Part shown: piece after piece, positions 3,971 to 25,515 of the stretch
Position numbering within the stretch: position 1 is the stretch's first letter
How the letters are laid out: each line of letters starts with the position of its first letter
Source: Isurus oxyrinchus
Taxonomy: Eukaryota
DNA: 64,000 bases
Direction of reading: 5' to 3'
NCBI GenBank assembly: GCA_026770705.1
Contig: JANJGN010000071.1
Location: forward strand, 2,108,001-2,172,000
Translations under genes and position numbers: made by a program
The notes under the pieces: generated by a model
The model's input: only the letters and a program-made list of their open reading frames with translations
Databases searched by the model: none
What the model was told of the DNA's origin: nothing

Positions 3971-5297
3971 TCAAAGGCAATTGGGGATGGGCAACAAATA
4001 CTGGCCTAGCCAGTGACACCAACATCCCTGAAATGAATAAGAAAAAAATGTATCAATCAATTAAATTTATTGATTAATCGAATCGAAATTCCTCCAGCTG
4101 CCGTGGTGGGATTTGAACCCGTGCCTTCAAAGTATTCACCTGGGCCTCTGGATCACTGGCCTAGTGCCATTCCCATTGTGTGACTGTCTGCTATCATCAT
4201 GGCTCTTTCACATCGATGTGGAAGTCCTGATAACAGAAGCATTGGACGAGGTACAGAAAGGTGACAAATCAGGAGCTCCATTGCTCAATATGAACGGATA
4301 ATAAAGATAAATGAACATAAACCTTCCAGTCGCTAATTAGGGAGTCACTGTGGAGCCCATGAGTCCCTCGCAGCGCTATTGCAACTGTCTGGATCCCCAG
4401 TAGGGGACTCGGGGTGCAGCTGTGTCTTCCTCATCATTTGGAAAAGCCGGAATTGTTCGGGTGCCCCTTCAAACAGGCCGAAGATGCAGTGGTTGATGTC
4501 TCCCACAGGCCCTGGGAGACCTCCCCTGCCAATTTGTTTTGTAGCTTATTCTTCAACTGCGACATTGGATCAGCTTGAAAAAGGGTGAGGCTGAGGCAAT
4601 ACCACCAGGTAAGCGTCTATCCCCTCACACTTCACCCCCCCACCCCCGTAACCGTCACAATCCCTCCCATCGTGCTGGAGGAGCATAATGTGCACATTCC
4701 CCTCCTTCCAATCAGTCTCCTCCCTTCCTCTCTAATCCTTGATCTTATTGTGTTCGGGGTTGACATCCCAGTCCTCCTCCCTAGACTGTCTGATGTTGAC
4801 ATCCCAATGCCCCATGTAGACCTGACCTCTCTCCAACTAGAGGCCCACTGTACTGTGACTTACAGAGACCACCGGCCCCCCTCGATTCCCACCCCCACCC
4901 CTACCCTCTATATTACCTGCTCCCCACTGACAGGCTGCAGATGCCTCCCCTGACTGGGATTGTGCCACCTGCGGCCTAGTATCAAGCCCCCACCCCCAGG
5001 ACCGACGTGTGTGAGGGACTGACCACGTCACTCACACCATGCTGGGCACCACCAACCCAGGACTGCCAGACTCTCCCCACCACACTGGACTGGGACTAGA
5101 ATAGGCGTGCCAAGCACAGCTCTCTAAATCGTGGCGCAGACCCACAGCACTCGCAATGTTTTGTGGCCCGAATCCTTGCTGAGGAACTGCCCAGCACTAA
5201 AATCAAAACAACTGCAGATGCTGGAAATCCAAAACAGAAACAGAAACAGAAATACCTGGAAAAACTCAGCAGGTCTGGCAGCATCGGCGGAGAAGAA

Positions 5298-5812
5298 CTG
5301 AGGGAGTGCGGCACTGTCGGAGGTTCAGTACTGAGGGAGTGCTGCACTGTCGGAGGGTTTGAACTGAGAGAGTGCTGCACTGTCGGAGGGTCTGAGCTGA
5401 GGGAGTGCTGCACTGTCGGAGGGTATGAACTGAGGGAGAGCTGCACTGTCGGAGGGTTTGAACTGACGGAGTGCTGCACTGTCGGAGGGTCTGAACTGAA
5501 GGAGTGCTGCACTGTCGGAGGGTCTGAACTGAGGGAGTGCTGCACTGTCGGAGGGTCTGAAATGAGGGAGTGCTGCACTGTCAGAGGGTCTGAACTGAGA
5601 AAGTGCTGCACTGTCAGAGGGTCTGAACTGAGGGAGTGCTGCACTGTCGGAGGTTCTGAACTGAGGGAGTGCTGCACTGTCGGAGGGTTTGAACTGAGGG
5701 AGTGCTGCACAGTCGGAGGGTCTGAACTGAGGGAGTGCTGCACTGTCGGAGGGTTTGAACTGAGGGAGTGCTGCATTGTCGGAGGGTCTGATCTGAGGGA
5801 GTGCTGCACTGT
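5298..5812 (+). repeat. 33-bp minisatellite (variant tctgaactga)
   Basis: Tandem ctgagggagtgctgcactgtcggagggtctgaa. Confidence 0.95.
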
Positions 5813-6544
5813 CTAAAGAACATTGTACAAATTGCACAAAATTTCATCTGATGCCTGTGTCTCATGCTAACATGAAGTTCATGCACACAACAGGAATATT
5901 TCTCGCTGTTTCTCTGCAGCAAGACAGCTTTGGTATCACACCACCCACTGGCAAGAGTGTGCAGTTACAATGTGACATGTTTACATTGGAAATTTCTATT
6001 ATAAAGATGGACAGAGGAATTCATCTGATTGGAAAACGTGACAACAGGAAGCTATGTCTTTGAGCCAAGTATTTTGCAGCAAAACAAGAATTTTAATCTT
6101 TAAATATCTACAGAACAGGCTGAGCATTTTAATCACTTGAGTTAATCAATGTAATTTTATTCATAAGCCAAATGCTTCTTACAATCTATCGCAGCATGAA
6201 AAAGGTGCAGCATTCAGAAAGCACATTCCAATCAGAGAACAGAGTTTAGCAACGTCACATTTCTGTTCATTCCTATTCGATGAACAATTTCAAAAGGAAA
6301 TTGGACGGAAATTGGAAATAAATTTGCAGGGATACGGGGATAGAGCAGGGGATGGGACTGAGTGGATTGCTTTACAGAGAGACAGCATAGACTCAATGGG
6401 CCAAATGTCCTCCTCCATTGCTGGAATGACTCGATGATACGGAGATGATTATAACCAGGACACTGACCAGTTTCATTACAACTTAACACAACATCACACG
6501 TTATTTGTCCGCACTGACTGACCAGATTGTTGCTGTACAAAGCT

Positions 6545-6684
6545 TCAAACAGTCTGTCGACTTCCTTTCACTGTTTGTCTCTCCCAGACACAGACTCCAG
6601 TGATAGTGATAACCACAGCCACAAGGAAGATCACAGCTCGTATTCCCAGGATCAGGATCACGTGCAGAATCTCTCCTCCACTGT
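6545..6684 (-). CDS. Gene A TM + short cytoplasmic exon: (D)SGGEILHVILILGIRAVIFLVAVVITITGVCVWERQTVKGSRQTV*
   Basis: Polypyrimidine acceptor ttctttctgtgtgttctctag, phase-1 frame, a ~28-aa hydrophobic stretch with internal Arg (CGA, 6640-6638), then TGA. This frame is not in the ORF track. Confidence 0.85.
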
Positions 6685-9600
6685 CTAGAGAACACACAGA
6701 AAGAAATCATCACTGACTCTCCGCTTTCAATCTCTCACTCTGGCTGAACAATCAAGCTTCATATCACTGCAACATTTGCTGTAATATTGACCCATCCACT
6801 GGGATTCAATGTGGAAGGAATGTTTTCATTGTAAACACTCTAAGAGTGGACAATCGGAACTTTCCCCTTAGCGTGGAACATTGGTGAGAATGGATCATTG
6901 TGCTGTTGGACTCCCTGTCCAATGTTTCTCTCCATCGCTGTGTACAGGATTGTGCTGTAGAAAATTCTGGAAACGTTTAGTGCAGGGTGGAAATCCATCT
7001 CGGACGCGTGTGCGAATCGGGCAGGATCGAGATGGACTCCCCCACGGACTTACACCCCCCGCTTAATAAACAGTTCCAATCTTTACCCAGAGAGAGGGGA
7101 GAATGTGGAACTCACTCCCACAGGGAATGGTTGAGGTGAATAGTAGGAAATTAGGAAGTGAAATTGCTTGAAAAGCTTGGAGATGCAAGGGTTAAGTGTT
7201 ACCGTGCCACCACTGGTGGGAGAGTGTAACTACAGCGTGACGTTTACATAGGCAATCCCCATTATGAACATGGACATCATGTGAAAAATGGGCACTGGAA
7301 AGCTGAGAACTTGATGTAAGCTTTTCAGCAACAGGAATTCCCTTCCTAAACCTCTCCACTTCCCTCTTATTCTCAGATACTCAAACAAAATTTCACACAA
7401 AATCACGTAAGGAGGAATTGGGACTGGTGACTGGTCAAAGAGTTAGATTTCAGGAAGGTTCTTAAAGTAGGATAGAGAGTTGGAGAGGCAGAGAGTATCT
7501 GTGAGTATCTCTGTGCATCTGAGTGTCTGTAATAGACTTTGCAATTTCCATATTCTTCCATAAATATGAAAGGGAACACAAATCCCAGAATCCAGGTCAA
7601 CTCTCCGGTGCAGCACTGAGGGAGGTCAGGTAATCCACAGGGGAGTATGTGCTAGTGTGTTTGTTTGTGAGTGTGTCTTTGTGTGTGCTCATAGATGTGG
7701 GATTGTGTGTCTGCAGGTGTCTATTTAAGGCTGGATATTTATGTGTGTTTCTGTAGTGTTTCAATCTGAGAGAGATGTTGAAGTTTGTCTTAACTAACGT
7801 TCCACAGTGATGGTTATGAACCCCTCCACTGCTCCATGTTCATTCTCTGAGCACACTGATAGTCTCCAGTATCCCTGGATGTAACGTGAGGAATCACCAA
7901 CCACAGCTCATTGTTGGAACTTGTTCTGTTCATTGTGATATTCAGATGTCAGGACCGGACTCAACAAGACAGATTGCAGGTTTACCAACAGAAAGTGAAC
8001 AACAATTTATATTTAAAGGGAAGAGAGTGCTGGTTAATCAGCAAGTGGTCTCTGATTGGAGGAGGTGTTGCCATGGAAAATAATGTGTGTGAGATGTAAA
8101 GTTTAGACAGCTTGTCTCTTCATTCAGCAACAATCAAATAAAGATCAGTTAACTTCTATCGACTGTGAAGCACTTTGAGAGGTCTGAGAATGTGGACACT
8201 GAGAACGGGCTGCACTGTCAGAGGGTCAGCGCTGAGGGAGTGCTGATGTAGAATGAAAGGTGTCTGTAATTACCTTGCACAGTTAGTACGAGGGTCCGCT
8301 CCGATGAAACAGATGGATATCTCACTCTGCAGCTGAGAGTGTGTCCATGGTGTTTGAGTGATGGGATCAGGGTCAGAACAGAAGTATAGGACAGAGTGAC
8401 ACCATGCTGAGTTACAGTGTTTGAGACTGATCCAGGTACGTCAGTGGGAGTGTCCCAGGTTAAGACAGGTGCTGCTGTTCCATTGCACGTTGTGTTGAAG
8501 GTGCAGCTTACATCCACACGCTTTCCTGCAATAATTTCAGCAGGGAATATCGTGGGTTTATCTGTGAAATCTAACAGACAGAGAATGGATCCTTTTAGAG
8601 AAATATAACGTGAAGCATCAGTTCAAATAGAAATCACAGTCCCACAAGAAAAAGCACTTTTACAAGGATGATATCAGATCTGAGAGGTTACAATGATTAG
8701 GAGAGAATTTCCTGCTTTGAGACTTTGGTGTTTCTGTCTCTCAGCTTAATACACGTTCACTCCGAGACACTTGAACTGATAATAGTGGGTGAGGGTGGTG
8801 GAGCAGACCAGAGTTTGGAGTGCACTAACCCATCAGTCCCTCAGCGATCTGGGCCATTTATTACTTTGCAATTTGTGGGAGCTTGCTGTATGCAAATTGG
8901 TTGCTGTGTTTCCCACATTACAATAGTAACTACAATTCAGGAATCAGCTCATTGGCTGTGAAGTGATTTGGTCCATGCTGAGGTGGTGAAAGGTGCTACA
9001 GAAATGTGAATCTTTCTTCTGTCGCTAAGTCAGACTTCGAGACAGGATTAGAGAGATCGATAGGAGTGGATAACCTGATAACATTGATGGACACAGTCAA
9101 TACATTTAATCATTGATATTAAAGTGAGTATTAGAGGTTGCTTTAGGAGTGAATTGGAAGCGATCACCAGGTTATTGAGAATCAGACAGTGTGTTATAAT
9201 AAGCTGTGTTTTGTGTTAATACGTAAACGTCACAGTTTGTGTTATTTCCCATTGAGTGTTGAATGTGAATTGTTGAGTAATTATAACACAGCACTTACCA
9301 GAAACGTGAAGCTGGGTTACAGGGTAATAGTTATGGCTCGGACCATTGTCAAATTCTATTCTGAAAAAATAAGGACCCGCATCTTCCCGTCTGATGTTGT
9401 TTATAATCAGGGAACAGTCGCCATCTTTCAGGTCTCCAGACAGCCGGGTCCAATGGTGGAACCGTGGTAACTCGTGACTGTGATCCTTGGAGTGAAAGGC
9501 TATAGACGATGTTCTCCATTCCTCATTATTAAACCAGACTCCACCTCGCGGTTGGTTTTCCAGACACGATGGATAACTGTAATGACATGGAATCTGTACA

Positions 9601-12600
9601 CAGGAACCTTCCTGCGCTGTCACCTGTCGTGGATTGTCACCTTTCCACTCTTGCGAGGGTTCAGCTGGGGAGAGAAATCTCAATATTTATCTCTGGATGG
9701 TTTGTGGATCCACTGAACCCAATATTTACAGATGAGGCTGAATTGGGGGGATGGTCAATACTGAGGAGAATGGCAACAAATTATATTGTCAGGAAGAATA
9801 GAAAAACAGGATATAATTTAAATGGAGACAGGCTGCAGAATGCAGTACAGAGGGATCTGGGTGTCCTGGTACATGAATCACAGAAAGTCAGCATTCAGGA
9901 ACACCACAGAATGAGGAAGGCAAGTGGAATGTTGGCCTTTATTGCAAAGGGATGGAGTATAAAAGGAGGGAAGTCTTGCAACAGCTGCACAGGGTGTTAG
10001 TGAGATTGTAACAGGATCATTGTGTACAGGCAGTTCAGAGAAGCTTCACTGGGCTGATTCCTGGGATTAAAGGGTTTGTCCTGTGAGGAAATGTTGAGCA
10101 GGTTGGGCCTGTATCCATTGGAGTTTAGAAGAATGAGGGGTGAGCTTATTGAAACATATCCGATTCCGAGGGGGCTTGACAGGGTGGATGCTGGGAGGAT
10201 GTTTCCCCCTCGTGGGGGAATCTAGAACCAGGGAGCACAGTTTCGGAATGAGGGCTCTCCCATTTAAGACTGAGATGAGGAGGAATTTCCTCTCTCAGAG
10301 GGGTGCTAGCCTGTGGAATTCTCTTCCCCAGAGAGCAGTGGAGGCTGGGCCATTGAATAGACTCAAGGCTGAGTGAGGCAGGTTTTTGATCGACAAGGGA
10401 GTCAAGGGTTTGGGGGACAAGCAGGAAAATGGAGTTAAGGCCGCAACCAGATCAGTGAGAGCAGGCTGGAGGGACCGAATGGCCTGCTCCTGTCCCTATT
10501 TCTTATGTTCCTACATTCTTACCTTCCTAAAATATTAAAGCTGCAGAATAAACATGCAAGTGACTGACCCGCTCGACCCACCTTCCATCTGGGGGTCCCA
10601 TGGGGAGGACCCTTCCTGAGCCAGATCCACCAGCCAACATGGTCTGGATCTGAGCACAGGAGACACGGGGGGGAGTGACTAACAGGCTCCTTGTGACAGG
10701 CCCCGTCTGTCCAATGGCTGGCTTTCAGCTGCCAAGGCCAGAGTTGTCCTTGCTAAAACCGGCTCAGGACAGGCCAGGACCCCTGTGCAGACCCCCTCCA
10801 GCGCTGCAGCCTCTGTACAAACCCCTCATGCGCTTGTGGAGAGACACAAACAAGGCTGCACATTACCGAGGAGAATCCCCTCTACGGACTAAGGGGCTGA
10901 CTCATCACCTTAAACTCAGCAAATGAGGAGGCTCTCGCTCGGTATCGGGGCTTGGCATTGGCTCAATAAAAATAAGAGCTGTTTCAGCACAGTGGCTGGG
11001 GTGGGAACCTGATTGAAGGGATTCAAACATGGAGTTCCGGGAAAGATGGGAACGGATTCGGGAGATGGAAACACGTTGCAGGACTTTGGAGGGGAAAGAG
11101 AGGCTGGGGATGGGACGGGAGATTACACAGACAGTGTGAGGGGTGGAAGGTGTAGTGGGGAGGAGACACTTTACTCAGGGGGGAGGTGTCATCACCCCTC
11201 AGCTCGGTTTACGTTACAGCTATGATGTGGATTCAATCACACACAATAAGCTCATGGATCTGGGAGCAGAAATAGACAAATCATTAAAAATAGTGACGCT
11301 GGTTAACACGGCCAAAAAACAAGCAAATCAAACACTATTATTTGCCATTGAGTGTTGGATGTGAATTGTTGAGTAATTATAACACAGCACTTACCAGAAA
11401 CATGAAGCTGGGTTTCAGGACGGTCGTTGTATCTATTCCTGCTGTCAAAATCTGTTCTGAATAAATAATATCCTGCATCTTCCCGTCTGATGTTGTTTAT
11501 AATCAGGGAACAGTCACCATCTTTCAGGTCTCCAGAAAGCCGGGTCCGATGGTGGAACCGTGGTAACTCGTGACTGTGATCCTTGGAGTGAAAGGCTATA
11601 GACCATGTTTCCCAATTCCTTCTCATATACCAGATTCCAACAGGTGATCTCGGTACTAAATATGATGGGTAGCTGTAATGACACGGAATCTGTACACACG
11701 AACCTTCCTGCGCTGTCACCTCTCGTGGAGTGTCACCTTTCCACACTTGTGGTAGTCCAGCTAGGGGGAGAAATATCAATATTTAACTCTGAATGTTTTG
11801 TCAATCCACTAGACTCAAAATCCACCCCCTCCATCACTGGGGCACAGTGGCTGCAGTCTGGACTCACAATGAATGCCCCAATGTTTCACAACACATTGAA
11901 GAGAATCCTGGATACAGGAGTGGACAAGTTCATTCTACATTGGCTCGTAGCCCTCAGGAACCTGCTTAGTGAAGCCAGTCTTCCACCCAACACAGTGTCT
12001 ACAAGACACACTAATTGAAGTGAGTTCACTGCTGATTTACAAACTAGGACAATGGATTAGGAGCCTTCAGAATTCCCCCATTATCACCATGATGAATCAT
12101 GAATTGGCCTAGCTGTCCTAGATCCTCAGTGTCTAAGGCAGTGGTTCCTATTGTGATGAAAGTATAATAATTTTCATAAAATTTTATAGTATATTGTGAA
12201 GTAGGTTTATGGGGGTACGCATGATGGGTCTGCATGTGATTTAAGTACATTTGGAGTTAATTAGATTGGAAGTTTAAAATGATCAAAAGGAGCTAGGTGC
12301 TTGACATGCTATTGAGTAAACATGGATGCTGCTTAGCATGGAAGGTATGAAGAGAATTTGCATTTTTATTTCAATGAAGGGGTTGTTGGATTTCAAAGGA
12401 ATCTTAGTTTGTTTACAAATAGCCAGATAAGCAAGACTAAGGAATGTGCTTATTTTTCTCAAAGGCTCTTGGCAATATGGGCACCACAAAAGAATTTGTT
12501 ATGAGGAAGATACAGTTTCAAAAACATTTGGAACAATAGAATTTTCATGTTACAAAGAGAGAAATATATATCTATCAGGGAGAATGAAAGGCTATGTGTC

Positions 12601-15600: not shown

Positions 15601-15692
15601 CTTTTACAAAGACTATTAGCCATAAATCTGTCTGAGCTGACGATGATATTACCTTGGAGAAGTGACAGGAGGAAGTAAGATTTCCCGATCAT
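6545..15692 (-). CDS. Gene A: Siglec-like receptor, activating type (leader 15692-15653; V 11760-11395; V 9664-9299; C2 8570-8274; TM/tail 6684-6545), ~402 aa if the broken exon at 7799-7950 is skipped
   Basis: All five exons have canonical AG/GT boundaries and compatible phase 1. V exons carry the Siglec motifs CVQIPC, DCSL and Y(F/L)FR. Confidence 0.82.
7799..7950 (-). pseudogene. 5'-truncated C2-set Ig exon of gene A
   Basis: Matches the 3' half of the gene B repeat exon (MNRTSSNNELWLVIPHVTSRDTGDYQC..ENEHGAVEGFITITVE) with its donor. The acceptor and 5' half are replaced by ~180 bp of unrelated sequence. Confidence 0.8.
8274..8570 (-). CDS. Gene A C2-set exon following the V domains (Siglec domain-2 type)
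   Basis: 297-nt exon DFTDKP..VSCTFNTTCNG..WDT..LSCRVRYP..LTVQ, nearly identical to 31811-32107. Confidence 0.9.
9299..9664 (-). CDS. Gene A second V-set exon (V2)
   Basis: 366 nt, AG/GT, EPSQEWKG..EGSCVQIPC..GDCSL..YFFRIE; essential Arg intact. Confidence 0.9.
9720..10510 (+). mobile_element. CR1-type LINE 3' fragment in the V1-V2 intron of gene A
   Basis: QRDLGVLVHESQK; RRNFLSQR..LWNSLP. Confidence 0.8.
11395..11760 (-). CDS. Gene A first V-set exon (V1)
   Basis: 366 nt, AG/GT, GLPQVWKG..EGSCVQIPC..GDCSL..YLFRTD; essential Arg intact. Confidence 0.9.
12150..14405 (+). mobile_element. Two adjacent LTR-like (solo LTR) segments
   Basis: TG...AACA ends with internal AATAAA; 12150-13080 resembles 48590-49470. 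Confidence 0.45.
15653..15692 (-). CDS. Gene A signal-peptide exon MIGKSYFLLSLLQ
   Basis: ATG + 40 nt + AG|GTAAT donor in phase 1. The same exon is conserved at 25476, 59537 and 61663. Confidence 0.8.
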
Positions 15693-16142
15693 TGTCCACT
15701 CCCAGATATTCCATCCACTTCTGACTCTCAAGCTATGAAAGAGAAAGGAGATAATGAGACCTCACCTCTTGTCCGACAGCTCTCGAGAGATCAGAACTGC
15801 TTTTAGACAATGTTTTCTCAGACTAATTTGATTATCTGTGGGATGATAGGTGCTCTGCAGAGAGTCACAAGACTTTAACAAAGAAAAACAATGAAGGGTT
15901 TGCATTTCTATAGCACCTTTCACCACCTCAAGATGTCCCAAAGCTCATGTCTCTGCTCTTCCCTCATCCCTTGAGCTAGAAAGATGTTCTGTACAACAGA
16001 CTTGAGCCTCACACCCAGATCTCAATAACCAGTAGAAATCTTTCAAAGACATCAATCATTGGAATCTGTCTTTATAAAGTCACAACATCAACAAAGGACA
16101 GTGTTGGTGGTGGAAGTGAATTCCAATCGTTCCATTACTTAC

Positions 16143-20130: not shown

Positions 20131-20273
20131 ATAGGTGTTTTCTTTCATAAAACATGGGAGAGAGGGTTAAACCCACTGACCCACGACTGATACTAACGAG
20201 GCTGCAGAATAATTTAACCCTATCAGTGCCAGTAAATGATGTGAGGATGCCTTCTGTTTCCATTTCTCTGTAG

Positions 20274-20522
20274 GGTAAACAGAACGTGCTGATTACTGAG
20301 CCCCGGAACACAACCAGAGGTACAACTAGTGAGGGGGAGACCCCAGCTCCCCGGGGTCTCTCTGAAGGTCCAGTGGGAGGCGATGCTGGACATGGGAACC
20401 CCGACAATCCCAACGACCTTCTCTACACCAATCCCCAAGTCTTCAGGGTGCCCAGTGGTGATGGGTCTGTCCACAGGGAAGAGCAGACGGAATACGCACA
20501 GATCAGATTCAAGAGAAACTGA
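20274..20522 (+). pseudogene. Orphan terminal cytoplasmic exon, copy 2 (LLYTNP ... TEYAQIRF)
   Basis: Acceptor and open frame; in phase with 18745-18826. Confidence 0.75.
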
Positions 20523-25044: not shown

Positions 25045-25475
25045 GTAAGTAACGGAACGATTGGAATTCTCTTCCATGACCAACACCGTCCTTTGTTGAT
25101 GTTGTGACTTTATAAAGACAGATTCCAATGATCGATGCCTTTGAAAGATTTCTACTGATTATTGAGATCTGGGTGTGGGGATCAAGTCTGTTGTACAGAA
25201 CATCTTTCTAGCTCAAGGACATGAGCTTGGGGACATCCAAGGTGGTGAAAGGTGCTATAGAAATGCAAGACCTTCATTGTTTTTCTTTCTGAATGCCTTG
25301 TAACTCTCTGCAGAGCACCTATCATCCCACAAAGAATCAAATTAGTCTGTGAAGATATTGTCGAAAAGCTGTTCTGATCTCTTGAGAGCATTCGGACAAG
25401 AGGTGAAGTCTCATTAACTCCTTTCTCTTTCAGAACTTCAGAGTTAGAAGCTGAGGAAATATCTGGGAGTGGACA

Positions 25476-25515
25476 ATGATCGGTAAATCATACTTCCTCC
25501 TGTCACTTCTCCAAG
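25476..25515 (+). CDS. Gene B signal-peptide exon MIGKSYFLLSLLQ
   Basis: ATG, hydrophobic run, CAAG|GTAAT donor; continues in frame into VGLSQEW. Confidence 0.8.

What the first reader, a model, noticed from the sequence alone, without database searches (positions are those of the whole stretch)
6545..6684. Hidden activating-type TM exon with intramembrane Arg, missed by the ORF track
Seen: the phase-1 exon gives ILHVILILGIRAVIFLVAVVITITGVCVW followed by ERQTVKGSRQTV*. It shows no obvious similarity to the TM exon of gene B. Known: a basic TM residue plus a short tail is the docking signature for ITAM adaptors (DAP12, FcR-gamma). Inference: gene A signals through such an adaptor.
Basis: partly seen in the sequence, partly recalled or inferred. 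Interest (0 to 1): 0.8.

Follow-up and report, generated by a model that had tools for sequence, protein, structure and literature searches.

The report
Shark Siglec arginine membrane-anchor exon
This short exon is the real last coding exon of a shark Siglec-type immune receptor gene, giving it a membrane anchor with a buried arginine and almost no tail, the usual build of an activating receptor, and the same design is already predicted by automatic annotation in other sharks.

Summary
On the minus strand an AG acceptor (6686/6685) opens a phase-1 exon, 6684..6545. It encodes a 5-residue stub, a 29-residue hydrophobic stretch with one Arg (codon 6640-6638), a 13-residue tyrosine-free tail and a stop.

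Contigs of 2 of 4 public runs laid, both from one sample, join 8274 to 6684 with GT..AG ends. They also join the V and C2 exons.

The 45-residue peptide finds 8 shark Ig-superfamily receptors that end in the same module (E 3e-13 to 4e-5). The closest are great white shark RefSeq models with the same C2-to-anchor join (89-93 % identical). The Arg is invariant in 17 of 17 module sequences.

The upstream exons are Siglec-type V-set and C2-set domains.

So the exon is real and is an activating-type anchor. Coupling to an ITAM adaptor is still an inference. No adaptor could be searched here, and which adaptor it would be cannot be read from the sequence.

The junction contigs are short and cannot separate this copy from near-identical paralogues.

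The scan noted this exon type before on other DNA of this genome. I rate it a new member of a known kind, of modest interest.

The parts
15652..15691 (-). Leader (signal peptide) exon, coding part from the ATG; it ends in phase 1, with donor GT at 15651/15650. Its link to this gene is inferred from position and strand.
   Evidence: reads MIGKSYFLLSLLQ plus one base, the same leader as in annotated relatives; it matches a leader joined to a V1-like exon in run X2, but with 3 mismatches of 30.
11395..11760 (-). First V-set exon (V1), 366 nt, phase 1 to phase 1, open frame
   Evidence: Pfam V-set E 2.8e-13 and Ig_CD22 E 7.2e-9. Contig depth is higher over 11400-11799 than beside it. No joint from 11395 to 9664 was listed.
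9299..9664 (-). Second V-set exon (V2), 366 nt, phase 1 to phase 1, with the Siglec-type Arg in YFFRIE
   Evidence: Pfam V-set and Ig_CD22, both E 1.9e-10. The 18 best PDB matches are all Siglecs, and the Arg aligns with YFFRVE of Siglec-5. Joint 9299|8570 seen in X1 and X2.
8274..8570 (-). C2-set exon, 297 nt, phase 1 to phase 1, donor GT at 8273/8272
   Evidence: Pfam C2-set_2 E 8.2e-9. Joints at both of its ends.
7742..7950 (-). Truncated, frameshifted remnant of gene B's repeated stalk C2 exon, lying in the last intron; skipped by the 8274-to-6684 joint
   Evidence: 88-95 % identical to the stalk exon copies of gene B; the 5' half is missing and the frame shifts.
6545..6684 (-). Terminal coding exon: stub, TM helix with Arg, 13-residue tail, stop. 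This is the finding.
6584..6670 (-). Hydrophobic stretch of 29 residues (I5 to W33 of the exon peptide), the predicted membrane span
   Evidence: Kyte-Doolittle 19-residue means of 2.3-2.95 across it
6638..6640 (-). CGA codon of the intramembrane arginine, residue 15 of the exon peptide
   Evidence: Invariant in 17 of 17 module sequences.
6156..6544 (-). Probable 3' untranslated part up to the first AATAAA (6161-6156)
   Evidence: AATAAA 383 nt after the stop. X2 contigs 6370-6558 and 6054-6280 have no differing letters, and depth falls in the 6000-6199 bin.

Best explanation
Gene A is a minus-strand Siglec-type receptor gene. Its exons are a leader (15691..15652), V1 (11760..11395), V2 (9664..9299), C2 (8570..8274) and a terminal exon (6684..6545 plus about 400 nt of untranslated sequence). 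The terminal exon is spliced in phase 1 straight onto the C2 exon. It skips a dead remnant of a stalk exon. It supplies a 5-residue stub, one membrane-spanning helix with a single arginine about ten residues in from the outer end of the hydrophobic stretch, and a 13-residue tail without tyrosine. What is shown: the exon, its splice and its membership in a conserved shark 'arginine anchor' module. What is inferred from the general rule for immune receptors: the arginine pairs inside the membrane with an aspartate of a separate signalling chain (DAP12, FcR-gamma/CD3-zeta type or DAP10). That chain would be needed for surface expression and would carry the activating signal when the V-set domains bind a sialylated ligand. 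Which chain it is cannot be read from the sequence.
For: Sequence and phases. All five exons are open, with AG/GT borders and matching phase 1. Splicing: one search shows joint 6684|8274 with CT..AC ends on the plus strand, which is GT..AG on the minus strand. It is seen in X1 (1 contig) and X2 (1 contig), that is 2 of 4 runs laid. Joint 8570|9299 is seen in X1 (1 contig) and X2 (2 contigs). The X2 contig 6370-6558 covers the stop and tail with 0 differing letters. Homology: 8 of 9 hits (E 3e-13 to 4.4e-5) are C-termini of shark Ig-superfamily receptors. The sources name them CD33-like, Siglec-12/-13, CD22-like, sialoadhesin-like and SLAM9-like. Great white shark models P0017, P0018 and P0020 have the same C2-to-anchor join and are 93, 93 and 89 % identical over the exon. 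Two S. canicula models of 272-273 aa are leader-V-C2-anchor. Conservation: Arg is invariant in 17 of 17 sequences, 15 of them distinct, found by similarity to the whole peptide, while neighbouring columns vary. Ectodomain: Pfam V-set, Ig_CD22 and C2-set_2; the best 18 PDB matches are all Siglecs. Design: KD maximum 2.95 despite the Arg, and no tyrosine in the tail.
Against: None of the runs is on record as RNA; 'RNA?' is the tool's guess. X1 and X2 are one sample, so there is one biological source. X5 and X12 have no depth at the exon's 5' end and show no joint. The junction contigs have only 23 and 28 letters on the shorter side, below the tool's own 31-letter rule for bridging. They cannot tell this copy from paralogues with near-identical C2 and anchor exons. 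Contigs also run unspliced across the acceptor (X1 6657-7121, X2 6676-6985), so DNA or unspliced RNA is present. No joint links V1 to V2 in this copy. The leader joined to a V1-like contig differs at 3 of 30 letters from the window's leader. No adaptor was looked for, so coupling is inference only. Invariance of one residue among relatives that are 42-96 % identical over the first 33 alignment columns (the stub and membrane stretch) is suggestive, not proof.
Confidence: 0.65

Rival explanations
1. The exon is real and translated, but the arginine anchor does not recruit an ITAM chain. The product would be a non-signalling or decoy receptor, or the Arg would serve retention, turnover or pairing with some other membrane partner.
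For: No adaptor evidence of any kind was obtained here. Skate family members have short-tailed anchors with no charged residue at all (P0055, P0058, P0061, P0065), so short-tailed Siglec-like receptors without a docking residue do exist in the group.
Against: The Arg is kept in 17 of 17 module sequences across three shark orders and several ectodomain types. A charged residue in a lipid-embedded helix is costly unless it is paired. The design matches the general rule for adaptor-coupled receptors (established knowledge, recalled).
Confidence: 0.2
2. The spliced contigs come from paralogues elsewhere in the genome. This particular copy is transcribed at most as unspliced RNA, or is a silent or decaying duplicate.
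For: The scan's notes list many copies of this exon type in the same genome. The junction sides are only 23 and 28 letters. Unspliced contigs cross the acceptor. The last intron holds a dead stalk exon. No annotated protein identical to this copy's exons was among the 104 fetched.
Against: All five exons are open with canonical borders. X2 contigs over the coding tail and the untranslated part have 0 differing letters, whereas the nearest known paralogue proteins differ at 3-5 of 45 residues. No differing letter inside 6545-6684 is among the listed ones, although 49 rows were not shown.
Confidence: 0.12
3. A chance open frame with a hydrophobic run, not an exon.
For: The frame is short (46 codons) and has no start codon of its own.
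Against: phmmer E-values go down to 3e-13 against 1.84 billion proteins, with the match at the C-terminus of receptors in 8 of 9 hits. A canonical acceptor lies in the right phase. A spliced joint exists. It is the only non-microsatellite segment at this hydrophobicity in six frames.
Confidence: 0.01

Closest known systems
Great white shark (Carcharodon carcharias) RefSeq models named 'sialic acid-binding Ig-like lectin 12' / 'isoform X2' (P0018, P0017) and 'myeloid cell surface antigen CD33-like' (P0020)
   Same: Same architecture: V-V-C2-anchor or V-C2-anchor. Same C2-to-anchor join. The anchor exon is 93, 93 and 89 % identical and C2 is 95-98 % identical.
   Different: None is identical to this copy in any exon, so they are paralogues or orthologues in a close relative. 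The window's species was not determined. They are automatic predictions and have not been studied experimentally.
Human Siglec-14 (paired with Siglec-5) and Siglec-16 (paired with Siglec-11): CD33-related Siglecs with a transmembrane Arg that couple to DAP12 (recalled, not seen in a call)
   Same: Siglec-type V-set with the ligand Arg. The best PDB match of V2 is Siglec-5 (E 2.7e-13). There is an Arg in the anchor and a short tail. Neighbouring genes have near-identical ectodomain exons but a different anchor: A versus B is 94.6 % in V2 and 97.6 % in C2.
   Different: No orthology is shown. All 92 named hits of the family search are elasmobranch proteins. The names given by the annotation pipeline vary among near-identical proteins. 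The anchor module has no detectable relative outside sharks. As assembled, gene B's tail exon has a stop at the first tyrosine position, so the partner here is not clearly inhibitory.
Siglec-15: V-set plus C2-set, transmembrane Lys, DAP12-coupled, conserved across vertebrates (recalled)
   Same: Two-kind ectodomain (V then C2) directly followed by a charged anchor. It is detected among the PDB matches of V2 (7zoz, E 2.4e-7).
   Different: It is a much weaker match than the CD33-type Siglecs, has Lys rather than Arg, and has a longer tail (recalled). The one family member that a source names Siglec-15 (P0100, a sawfish protein) has an uncharged anchor and an 89-residue tail.
Skate and zebrafish modular domain immune-type receptors (MDIR)
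   Same: Multigene families of activating and inhibitory Ig-superfamily receptors in a cartilaginous fish, as stated in two passages of PMC3031540. Paired activating and inhibitory designs are therefore already known in the group.
   Different: MDIRs have CD300/TREM/pIgR-like V domains, not Siglec-type ones. I saw only those passages, not the original MDIR paper.

Membership tests
Adaptor-coupled activating immunoreceptor (design of KIR2DS, Siglec-14, TREM2) | Type I membrane protein with Ig-type ectodomain | tested here: met
   V-set, Ig_CD22 and C2-set_2 hits on the three upstream exons. Leader exon present. All exons are in phase 1.
Adaptor-coupled activating immunoreceptor (design of KIR2DS, Siglec-14, TREM2) | One basic residue inside the membrane-spanning helix | tested here: met
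   A single Arg at residue 15 of the exon peptide lies inside a 29-residue hydrophobic stretch. KD 19-residue means stay at or above 2.3 around it.
Adaptor-coupled activating immunoreceptor (design of KIR2DS, Siglec-14, TREM2) | Short cytoplasmic tail without tyrosine-based motifs | tested here: met
   13 residues after the hydrophobic stretch, with no Tyr. Relatives have tails of 5-19 residues by the same measure.
Adaptor-coupled activating immunoreceptor (design of KIR2DS, Siglec-14, TREM2) | Physical association with an Asp-bearing signalling chain, needed for surface expression or signalling | not testable with these tools
   Needs co-expression, co-precipitation and an Arg-to-Ala control.
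Adaptor-coupled activating immunoreceptor (design of KIR2DS, Siglec-14, TREM2) | Such a chain is encoded in the same genome and expressed in the same cells | not tested
The scan's notes hold no adaptor gene for this genome. The literature searches found nothing.
Siglec family | N-terminal V-set domain with the conserved ligand-binding Arg on strand F | tested here: met
   V2 YFFRIE aligns with YFFRVE of Siglec-5. V1 has LFRTD at the same place. That this Arg is the ligand-binding one is recalled.
Siglec family | C2-set domain(s) after the V-set | tested here: met
   C2-set_2 E 8.2e-9
Siglec family | Binds sialylated glycans | not testable with these tools
   Needs a glycan-binding assay with an Fc fusion, wild type versus the V-set Arg mutant.
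Siglec family | Orthology to a named mammalian activating Siglec (14, 15, 16) | tested here: inconclusive
   The sources name near-identical shark proteins CD33-like and Siglec-10, -12, -13, -14. No tree was built against mammalian Siglecs. The anchor has no relative outside sharks.
Shark arginine-anchor module (L..ILGIRA.IF..V...CV) | Invariant core motif and position at the C-terminus after an Ig exon | tested here: met
   The motif is invariant in 17 of 17 sequences. The module is C-terminal in 15 of the 16 proteins; P0099 carries it internally in an odd model.

The most novel reading that the evidence does not exclude
The arginine anchor is a shuffled or homogenised cassette. Over the stub and membrane stretch, Siglec-named, CD22-named and pIgR-named receptors of one shark order are 90-96 % identical (one single-V whale shark model is lower, at 78-84 %). 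The same receptor type is only 69-81 % identical between orders. C2 domains likewise group by species, not by tail type: in the great white shark they are 89-99 % identical between arginine-anchor and long-tail proteins, against 85-91 % between species for arginine-anchor proteins. On this reading, sharks keep activating and long-tailed Siglec-type receptors matched by ongoing gene conversion or repeated exon swapping. Gene A would then be such a product: a gene-B-like gene that lost its stalk exons, of which one dead remnant is left, and gained the cassette. This would be an origin of paired Siglecs independent of the primate Siglec-5/-14 case.
Probability: 0.4. Interest if true: 0.5.

Novelty: new member of a known kind. 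Interest (0 to 1): 0.3.

Why it matters
It adds one more intact-looking, transcribed activating-type member to a large shark Siglec-like gene cluster. It fixes the gene's exon structure, including an exon that simple ORF lists overlook. Taken together with its relatives, it shows that the 'charged anchor plus short tail' design is in use on Siglec-type ectodomains in three shark orders. It also shows that one anchor module serves several receptor types. That makes sharks a usable system for asking when adaptor-coupled Siglecs arose, and whether paired receptors are kept alike by gene conversion outside mammals. For this single copy the gain is mainly correct annotation.

Tried and rejected
I looked for a second copy of the exon in the window and found none (blastn). 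I looked for any similarity to gene B's TM exon and found none. I looked for other membrane-span candidates downstream of the C2 exon; none comes close and none has relatives.

I asked whether the stalk-exon remnant at 7742-7950 could be a usable third Ig exon. I rejected this: its 5' half is missing and it is frameshifted.

I looked for the letters of a loose end at 6523, a donor-like site 22 nt after the stop. They are not in the window, so a 3'-UTR splice and a paralogue with another 3' end stay open.

A PDB search with the anchor peptide at E<=10 gave 0 matches. Pfam on the anchor peptide gave 0 families.

Literature: six searches. I saw only the listings and abstract starts. None dealt with shark activating Siglecs or shark DAP12/FcR-gamma. 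I read passages only of PMC3031540 (MDIR) and PMC8455134 (one mention of Siglec proteins, which points to its Supplementary file 9; I could not see that file). Supplements were closed and may hold gene lists that bear on how many such genes are already catalogued.

One search, a bacterial-type promoter and terminator scan, is irrelevant to a vertebrate gene and was not used. In one search my gene B row was translated in the wrong frame and is dropped. The A/B comparison rests on the nucleotide identities. I did not fold any protein and built no tree. The window's species was not determined.

Full report
**What is in the sequence.**
- The finding lies on the minus strand.
- A pyrimidine-rich tract and AG at 6686/6685 are followed by an exon that starts at 6684. 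It runs to a TGA at 6547-6545.
- Translated from 6682 it reads SGGEILHVILILGIRAVIFLVAVVITITGVCVWERQTVKGSRQTV, then stop.
- The two bases before that frame complete a codon begun by base 8274, the last base of an upstream C2-set exon.
- The hydrophobic stretch is 29 residues long (I5 to W33) and holds one arginine (residue 15, codon 6640-6638).
- The tail after the stretch has 13 residues and no tyrosine.

**More than chance.**
- The best 19-residue Kyte-Doolittle mean is 2.95.
- Of 52,090 stop-free 19-residue windows in six frames of the window, nine segments reach that value. Eight are microsatellite translations and the ninth is this exon.
- Downstream of the C2 exon on the same strand nothing else comes close.
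- The exon has no second copy in the window.
- It has no similarity to gene B's TM exon at 45586-45702.

**The gene around it.** Upstream on the same strand there are four more exons:
- A leader exon that reads MIGKSYFLLSLLQ and ends in phase 1 (15691..15652).
- A first V-set exon (11760..11395).
- A second V-set exon (9664..9299).
- The C2-set exon (8570..8274).

All are open, have AG/GT borders and keep phase 1.

- Pfam finds V-set and Ig_CD22 in both V exons and C2-set_2 in the C2 exon. It finds nothing in the anchor peptide.
- Against solved structures, the 18 best matches of V2 are all Siglecs (Siglec-5, -8, CD33, sialoadhesin, Siglec-7, -10, MAG, Siglec-15; E 2.7e-13 to 2.4e-7).
- The Arg of YFFRIE aligns with that of YFFRVE in Siglec-5.
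- The last intron holds, at 7742-7950, a remnant of the stalk C2 exon that gene B repeats many times. It is 88-95 % identical, lacks its 5' half and is frameshifted.
- An AATAAA lies 383 nt after the stop.

I searched the exons one by one.

**Is it spliced?**
- The look-up of sequencing runs listed 17 runs that hold part of 6300-6700. None is on record as RNA.
- I laid X1, X2, X5 and X12 on 6000-11999. All are Logan contigs.
- In 2 of the 4 runs (X1 and X2, which are one sample) one contig each joins 6684 to 8274. The skipped part ends in CT..AC on the plus strand, which is GT..AG on the minus strand.
- The same two runs join 8570 to 9299 (1 and 2 contigs).
- X5 and X12 have no depth at 6600-6799 and show neither joint.
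- The X2 contigs 6370-6558 and 6054-6280 match the window without a single differing letter. This copy, or an identical one, is therefore in that sample.

Against this reading:
- The shorter sides of the junction contigs are 23 and 28 letters, under the tool's own 31-letter rule.
- Paralogues share near-identical exon ends.
- Contigs also run unspliced across the acceptor (X1 6657-7121, X2 6676-6985).
- No joint links V1 to V2 of this copy.
- A V1-like contig in X2 is joined to a leader that differs at 3 of 30 letters from each of the three leader copies in the window.

So the splice is shown for this exon type and is consistent with this copy. It is not uniquely assigned to this copy.

**Relatives.**
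- phmmer with the 45-residue peptide against 1.84 billion representatives gave 9 hits at E<=0.001. Eight have the match at the very C-terminus of a shark Ig-superfamily receptor (E 3.0e-13 to 4.4e-5). The ninth is a repeat artefact.
- Their sources name them as follows:
  - CD33-like and Siglec-12 (Scyliorhinus torazame)
  - Siglec-13 and CD22-like (Chiloscyllium punctatum)
  - CD22-like (Hemiscyllium ocellatum)
  - sialoadhesin-like (Rhincodon typus)
  - a hypothetical protein (S. torazame)
  - SLAM family member 9-like (Mustelus asterias)
- Pfam confirms their Ig make-up.
- Two region searches added two S. canicula models of 272-273 aa (leader-V-C2-anchor) and a pIgR-named S. torazame protein.
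- A whole-protein search with one of those models gave 94 hits at E<=1e-20. Of these, 92 carry a name, and all the named ones are from sharks, rays, skates or sawfish.
- Of all 104 proteins fetched, 16 are hit by the exon peptide in blastp.
- The closest are three great white shark models (P0017, P0018, P0020). They are 93, 93 and 89 % identical over the exon, have the same C2-to-anchor join, and are built V-V-C2-anchor or V-C2-anchor.
- None is identical to this copy in any exon. I could not name the window's species.
- In the alignment of this exon with the 16 proteins, the core L..ILGIRA.IF..V...CV is invariant. This includes the Arg in 17 of 17 sequences (15 distinct), while flanking columns vary.
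- One stingray protein has an unrelated anchor with an Arg and an 11-residue tail. Several skate proteins have short tails without any charged anchor residue.

**How it most likely works.**
- Shown: a Siglec-type ectodomain sits almost directly on a membrane helix with one conserved arginine and a tail too short to signal.
- Inferred from the well-established rule for immune receptors (recalled, not tested): the arginine is neutralised in the membrane by an aspartate of a disulfide-linked signalling dimer. That dimer brings the receptor to the surface and carries the ITAM or YxxM.
- The Arg lies about ten residues from the outer end and eighteen from the inner end of the hydrophobic stretch. 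As far as I recall, an outer-third Arg is more typical of FcR-gamma/zeta-coupled receptors and a central Lys of DAP12-coupled ones. I give this little weight, and the adaptor cannot be named from the sequence.
- No adaptor could be searched.

**Context: pairing.**
- Gene A and the plus-strand gene B are head to head. They share V2 (94.6 %) and C2 (97.6 %) at the nucleotide level, with identity running into the introns.
- The likeness ends about 30 nt after the C2 exon, at a 33-nt satellite.
- Gene B goes on to many stalk exons and an uncharged TM exon. Its tail exon, as assembled, has a stop where relatives have the first tyrosine. An orphan copy of that tail exon at 20256-20519 is intact. Gene B is therefore not clearly an inhibitory partner.
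- Across species, C2 domains group by species rather than by tail type (the gene B row there was mis-framed and is dropped).
- Anchor modules of Siglec-, CD22- and pIgR-named proteins group by shark order rather than by ectodomain name. The SLAM-named ones stand apart.
- This fits gene conversion or repeated exon swapping.

**Compared with what is known.**
- The design is that of human Siglec-14 and -16, and more loosely Siglec-15 (recalled).
- It is also the design of activating members of many paired receptor families. Passages in PMC3031540 describe the skate MDIR families as activating/inhibitory multigene families.
- Membership in the Siglec family is met for the two sequence features I could test. 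Orthology to any mammalian activating Siglec is not shown.
- Six literature searches found no paper on shark activating Siglecs or shark adaptors (listings only).
- The same module is already predicted in RefSeq models of at least eight shark species.
- The scan's own notes show that this exon type was reported, and in several cases followed up, at many other places of this genome. I treated those notes as leads and re-tested the points myself.

**Verdict.**
- The structural reading (activating-type anchor exon, really spliced) is supported, with the caveat about paralogues.
- The functional reading (adaptor coupling) is likely but untested.
- It is a new member of a known kind. Interest is modest for this copy and somewhat higher for the family-wide pattern of cassette sharing.

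Noticed in passing
window 7742-7950 (-): A dead remnant of gene B's repeated stalk C2 exon sits in gene A's last intron. It is 88-95 % identical to the copies in gene B, lacks its 5' half and has one frameshift. This suggests that gene A descends from a long-stalked gene.
   Followed up: partly
window 6522-6523 (-): A donor-like G|GTCAGT lies 22 nt after the stop. One X1 contig leaves the window sequence exactly there, and its further letters are not in the window. This is either a 3'-UTR splice or a paralogue with another 3' end.
   Followed up: partly
window 48005-48289 (+) and 20256-20519 (+): Gene B's last exon has a stop codon where relatives have the first tail tyrosine, so the later TEYAQI motif would not be made. 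A similar tail exon at 20.3 kb is intact but stands alone between the two head-to-head genes.
   Followed up: partly
window 15652-15714 (-); also 59515-59577 (+), 61641-61703 (+), 25457-25516 (+): The leader exon has two overlapping ATG frames. One gives MIGKSYFLLSLLQ. The other gives an MEYLGVDNDREILLPPVTSP-type start, which annotated great white shark models also use as an N-terminus (in the form MKYLGVDNDREILLPPVTSP). Several copies of this exon lie in the window.
   Followed up: no
window 8198-8245, 5099-5964, 16.5-17.3 kb, 19.8-20.1 kb, 32.1-32.7 kb, 46.8-47.9 kb, 55.1-55.9 kb, 63.8-64.0 kb: A 33-nt satellite borders the C2 exons of all three gene copies. In translation it gives long false ORFs such as SLSTDPLTVQH repeats. 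It marks the point where the likeness between gene A and gene B ends.
   Followed up: no
window 7311-8055: One X1 contig skips 745 nt with non-canonical ends (TT..GA). This looks like a DNA-level deletion variant or a paralogue that lacks the stalk-exon remnant, not a splice.
   Followed up: no
window 33056-37637 (N runs) and 32882-37471: Five N runs each directly abut a partial copy of the stalk exon, so the count of stalk exons in gene B cannot be read from this window. I left the N runs alone.
   Followed up: no
proteins P0001-P0020, P0099: The arginine-anchor module groups by shark order rather than by ectodomain name. It is mostly 90-96 % identical within an order across Siglec-, CD22- and pIgR-named proteins, against 69-81 % between orders. 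The SLAM-named versions form a separate, more distant pair.
   Followed up: partly
window 63231-63731 (+), 62393-62901: A third gene copy starts near the window's end. Its C2 exon is 99 % identical to gene A's. A note of the scan places another arginine-anchor exon about 20 kb beyond the window's end.
   Followed up: no
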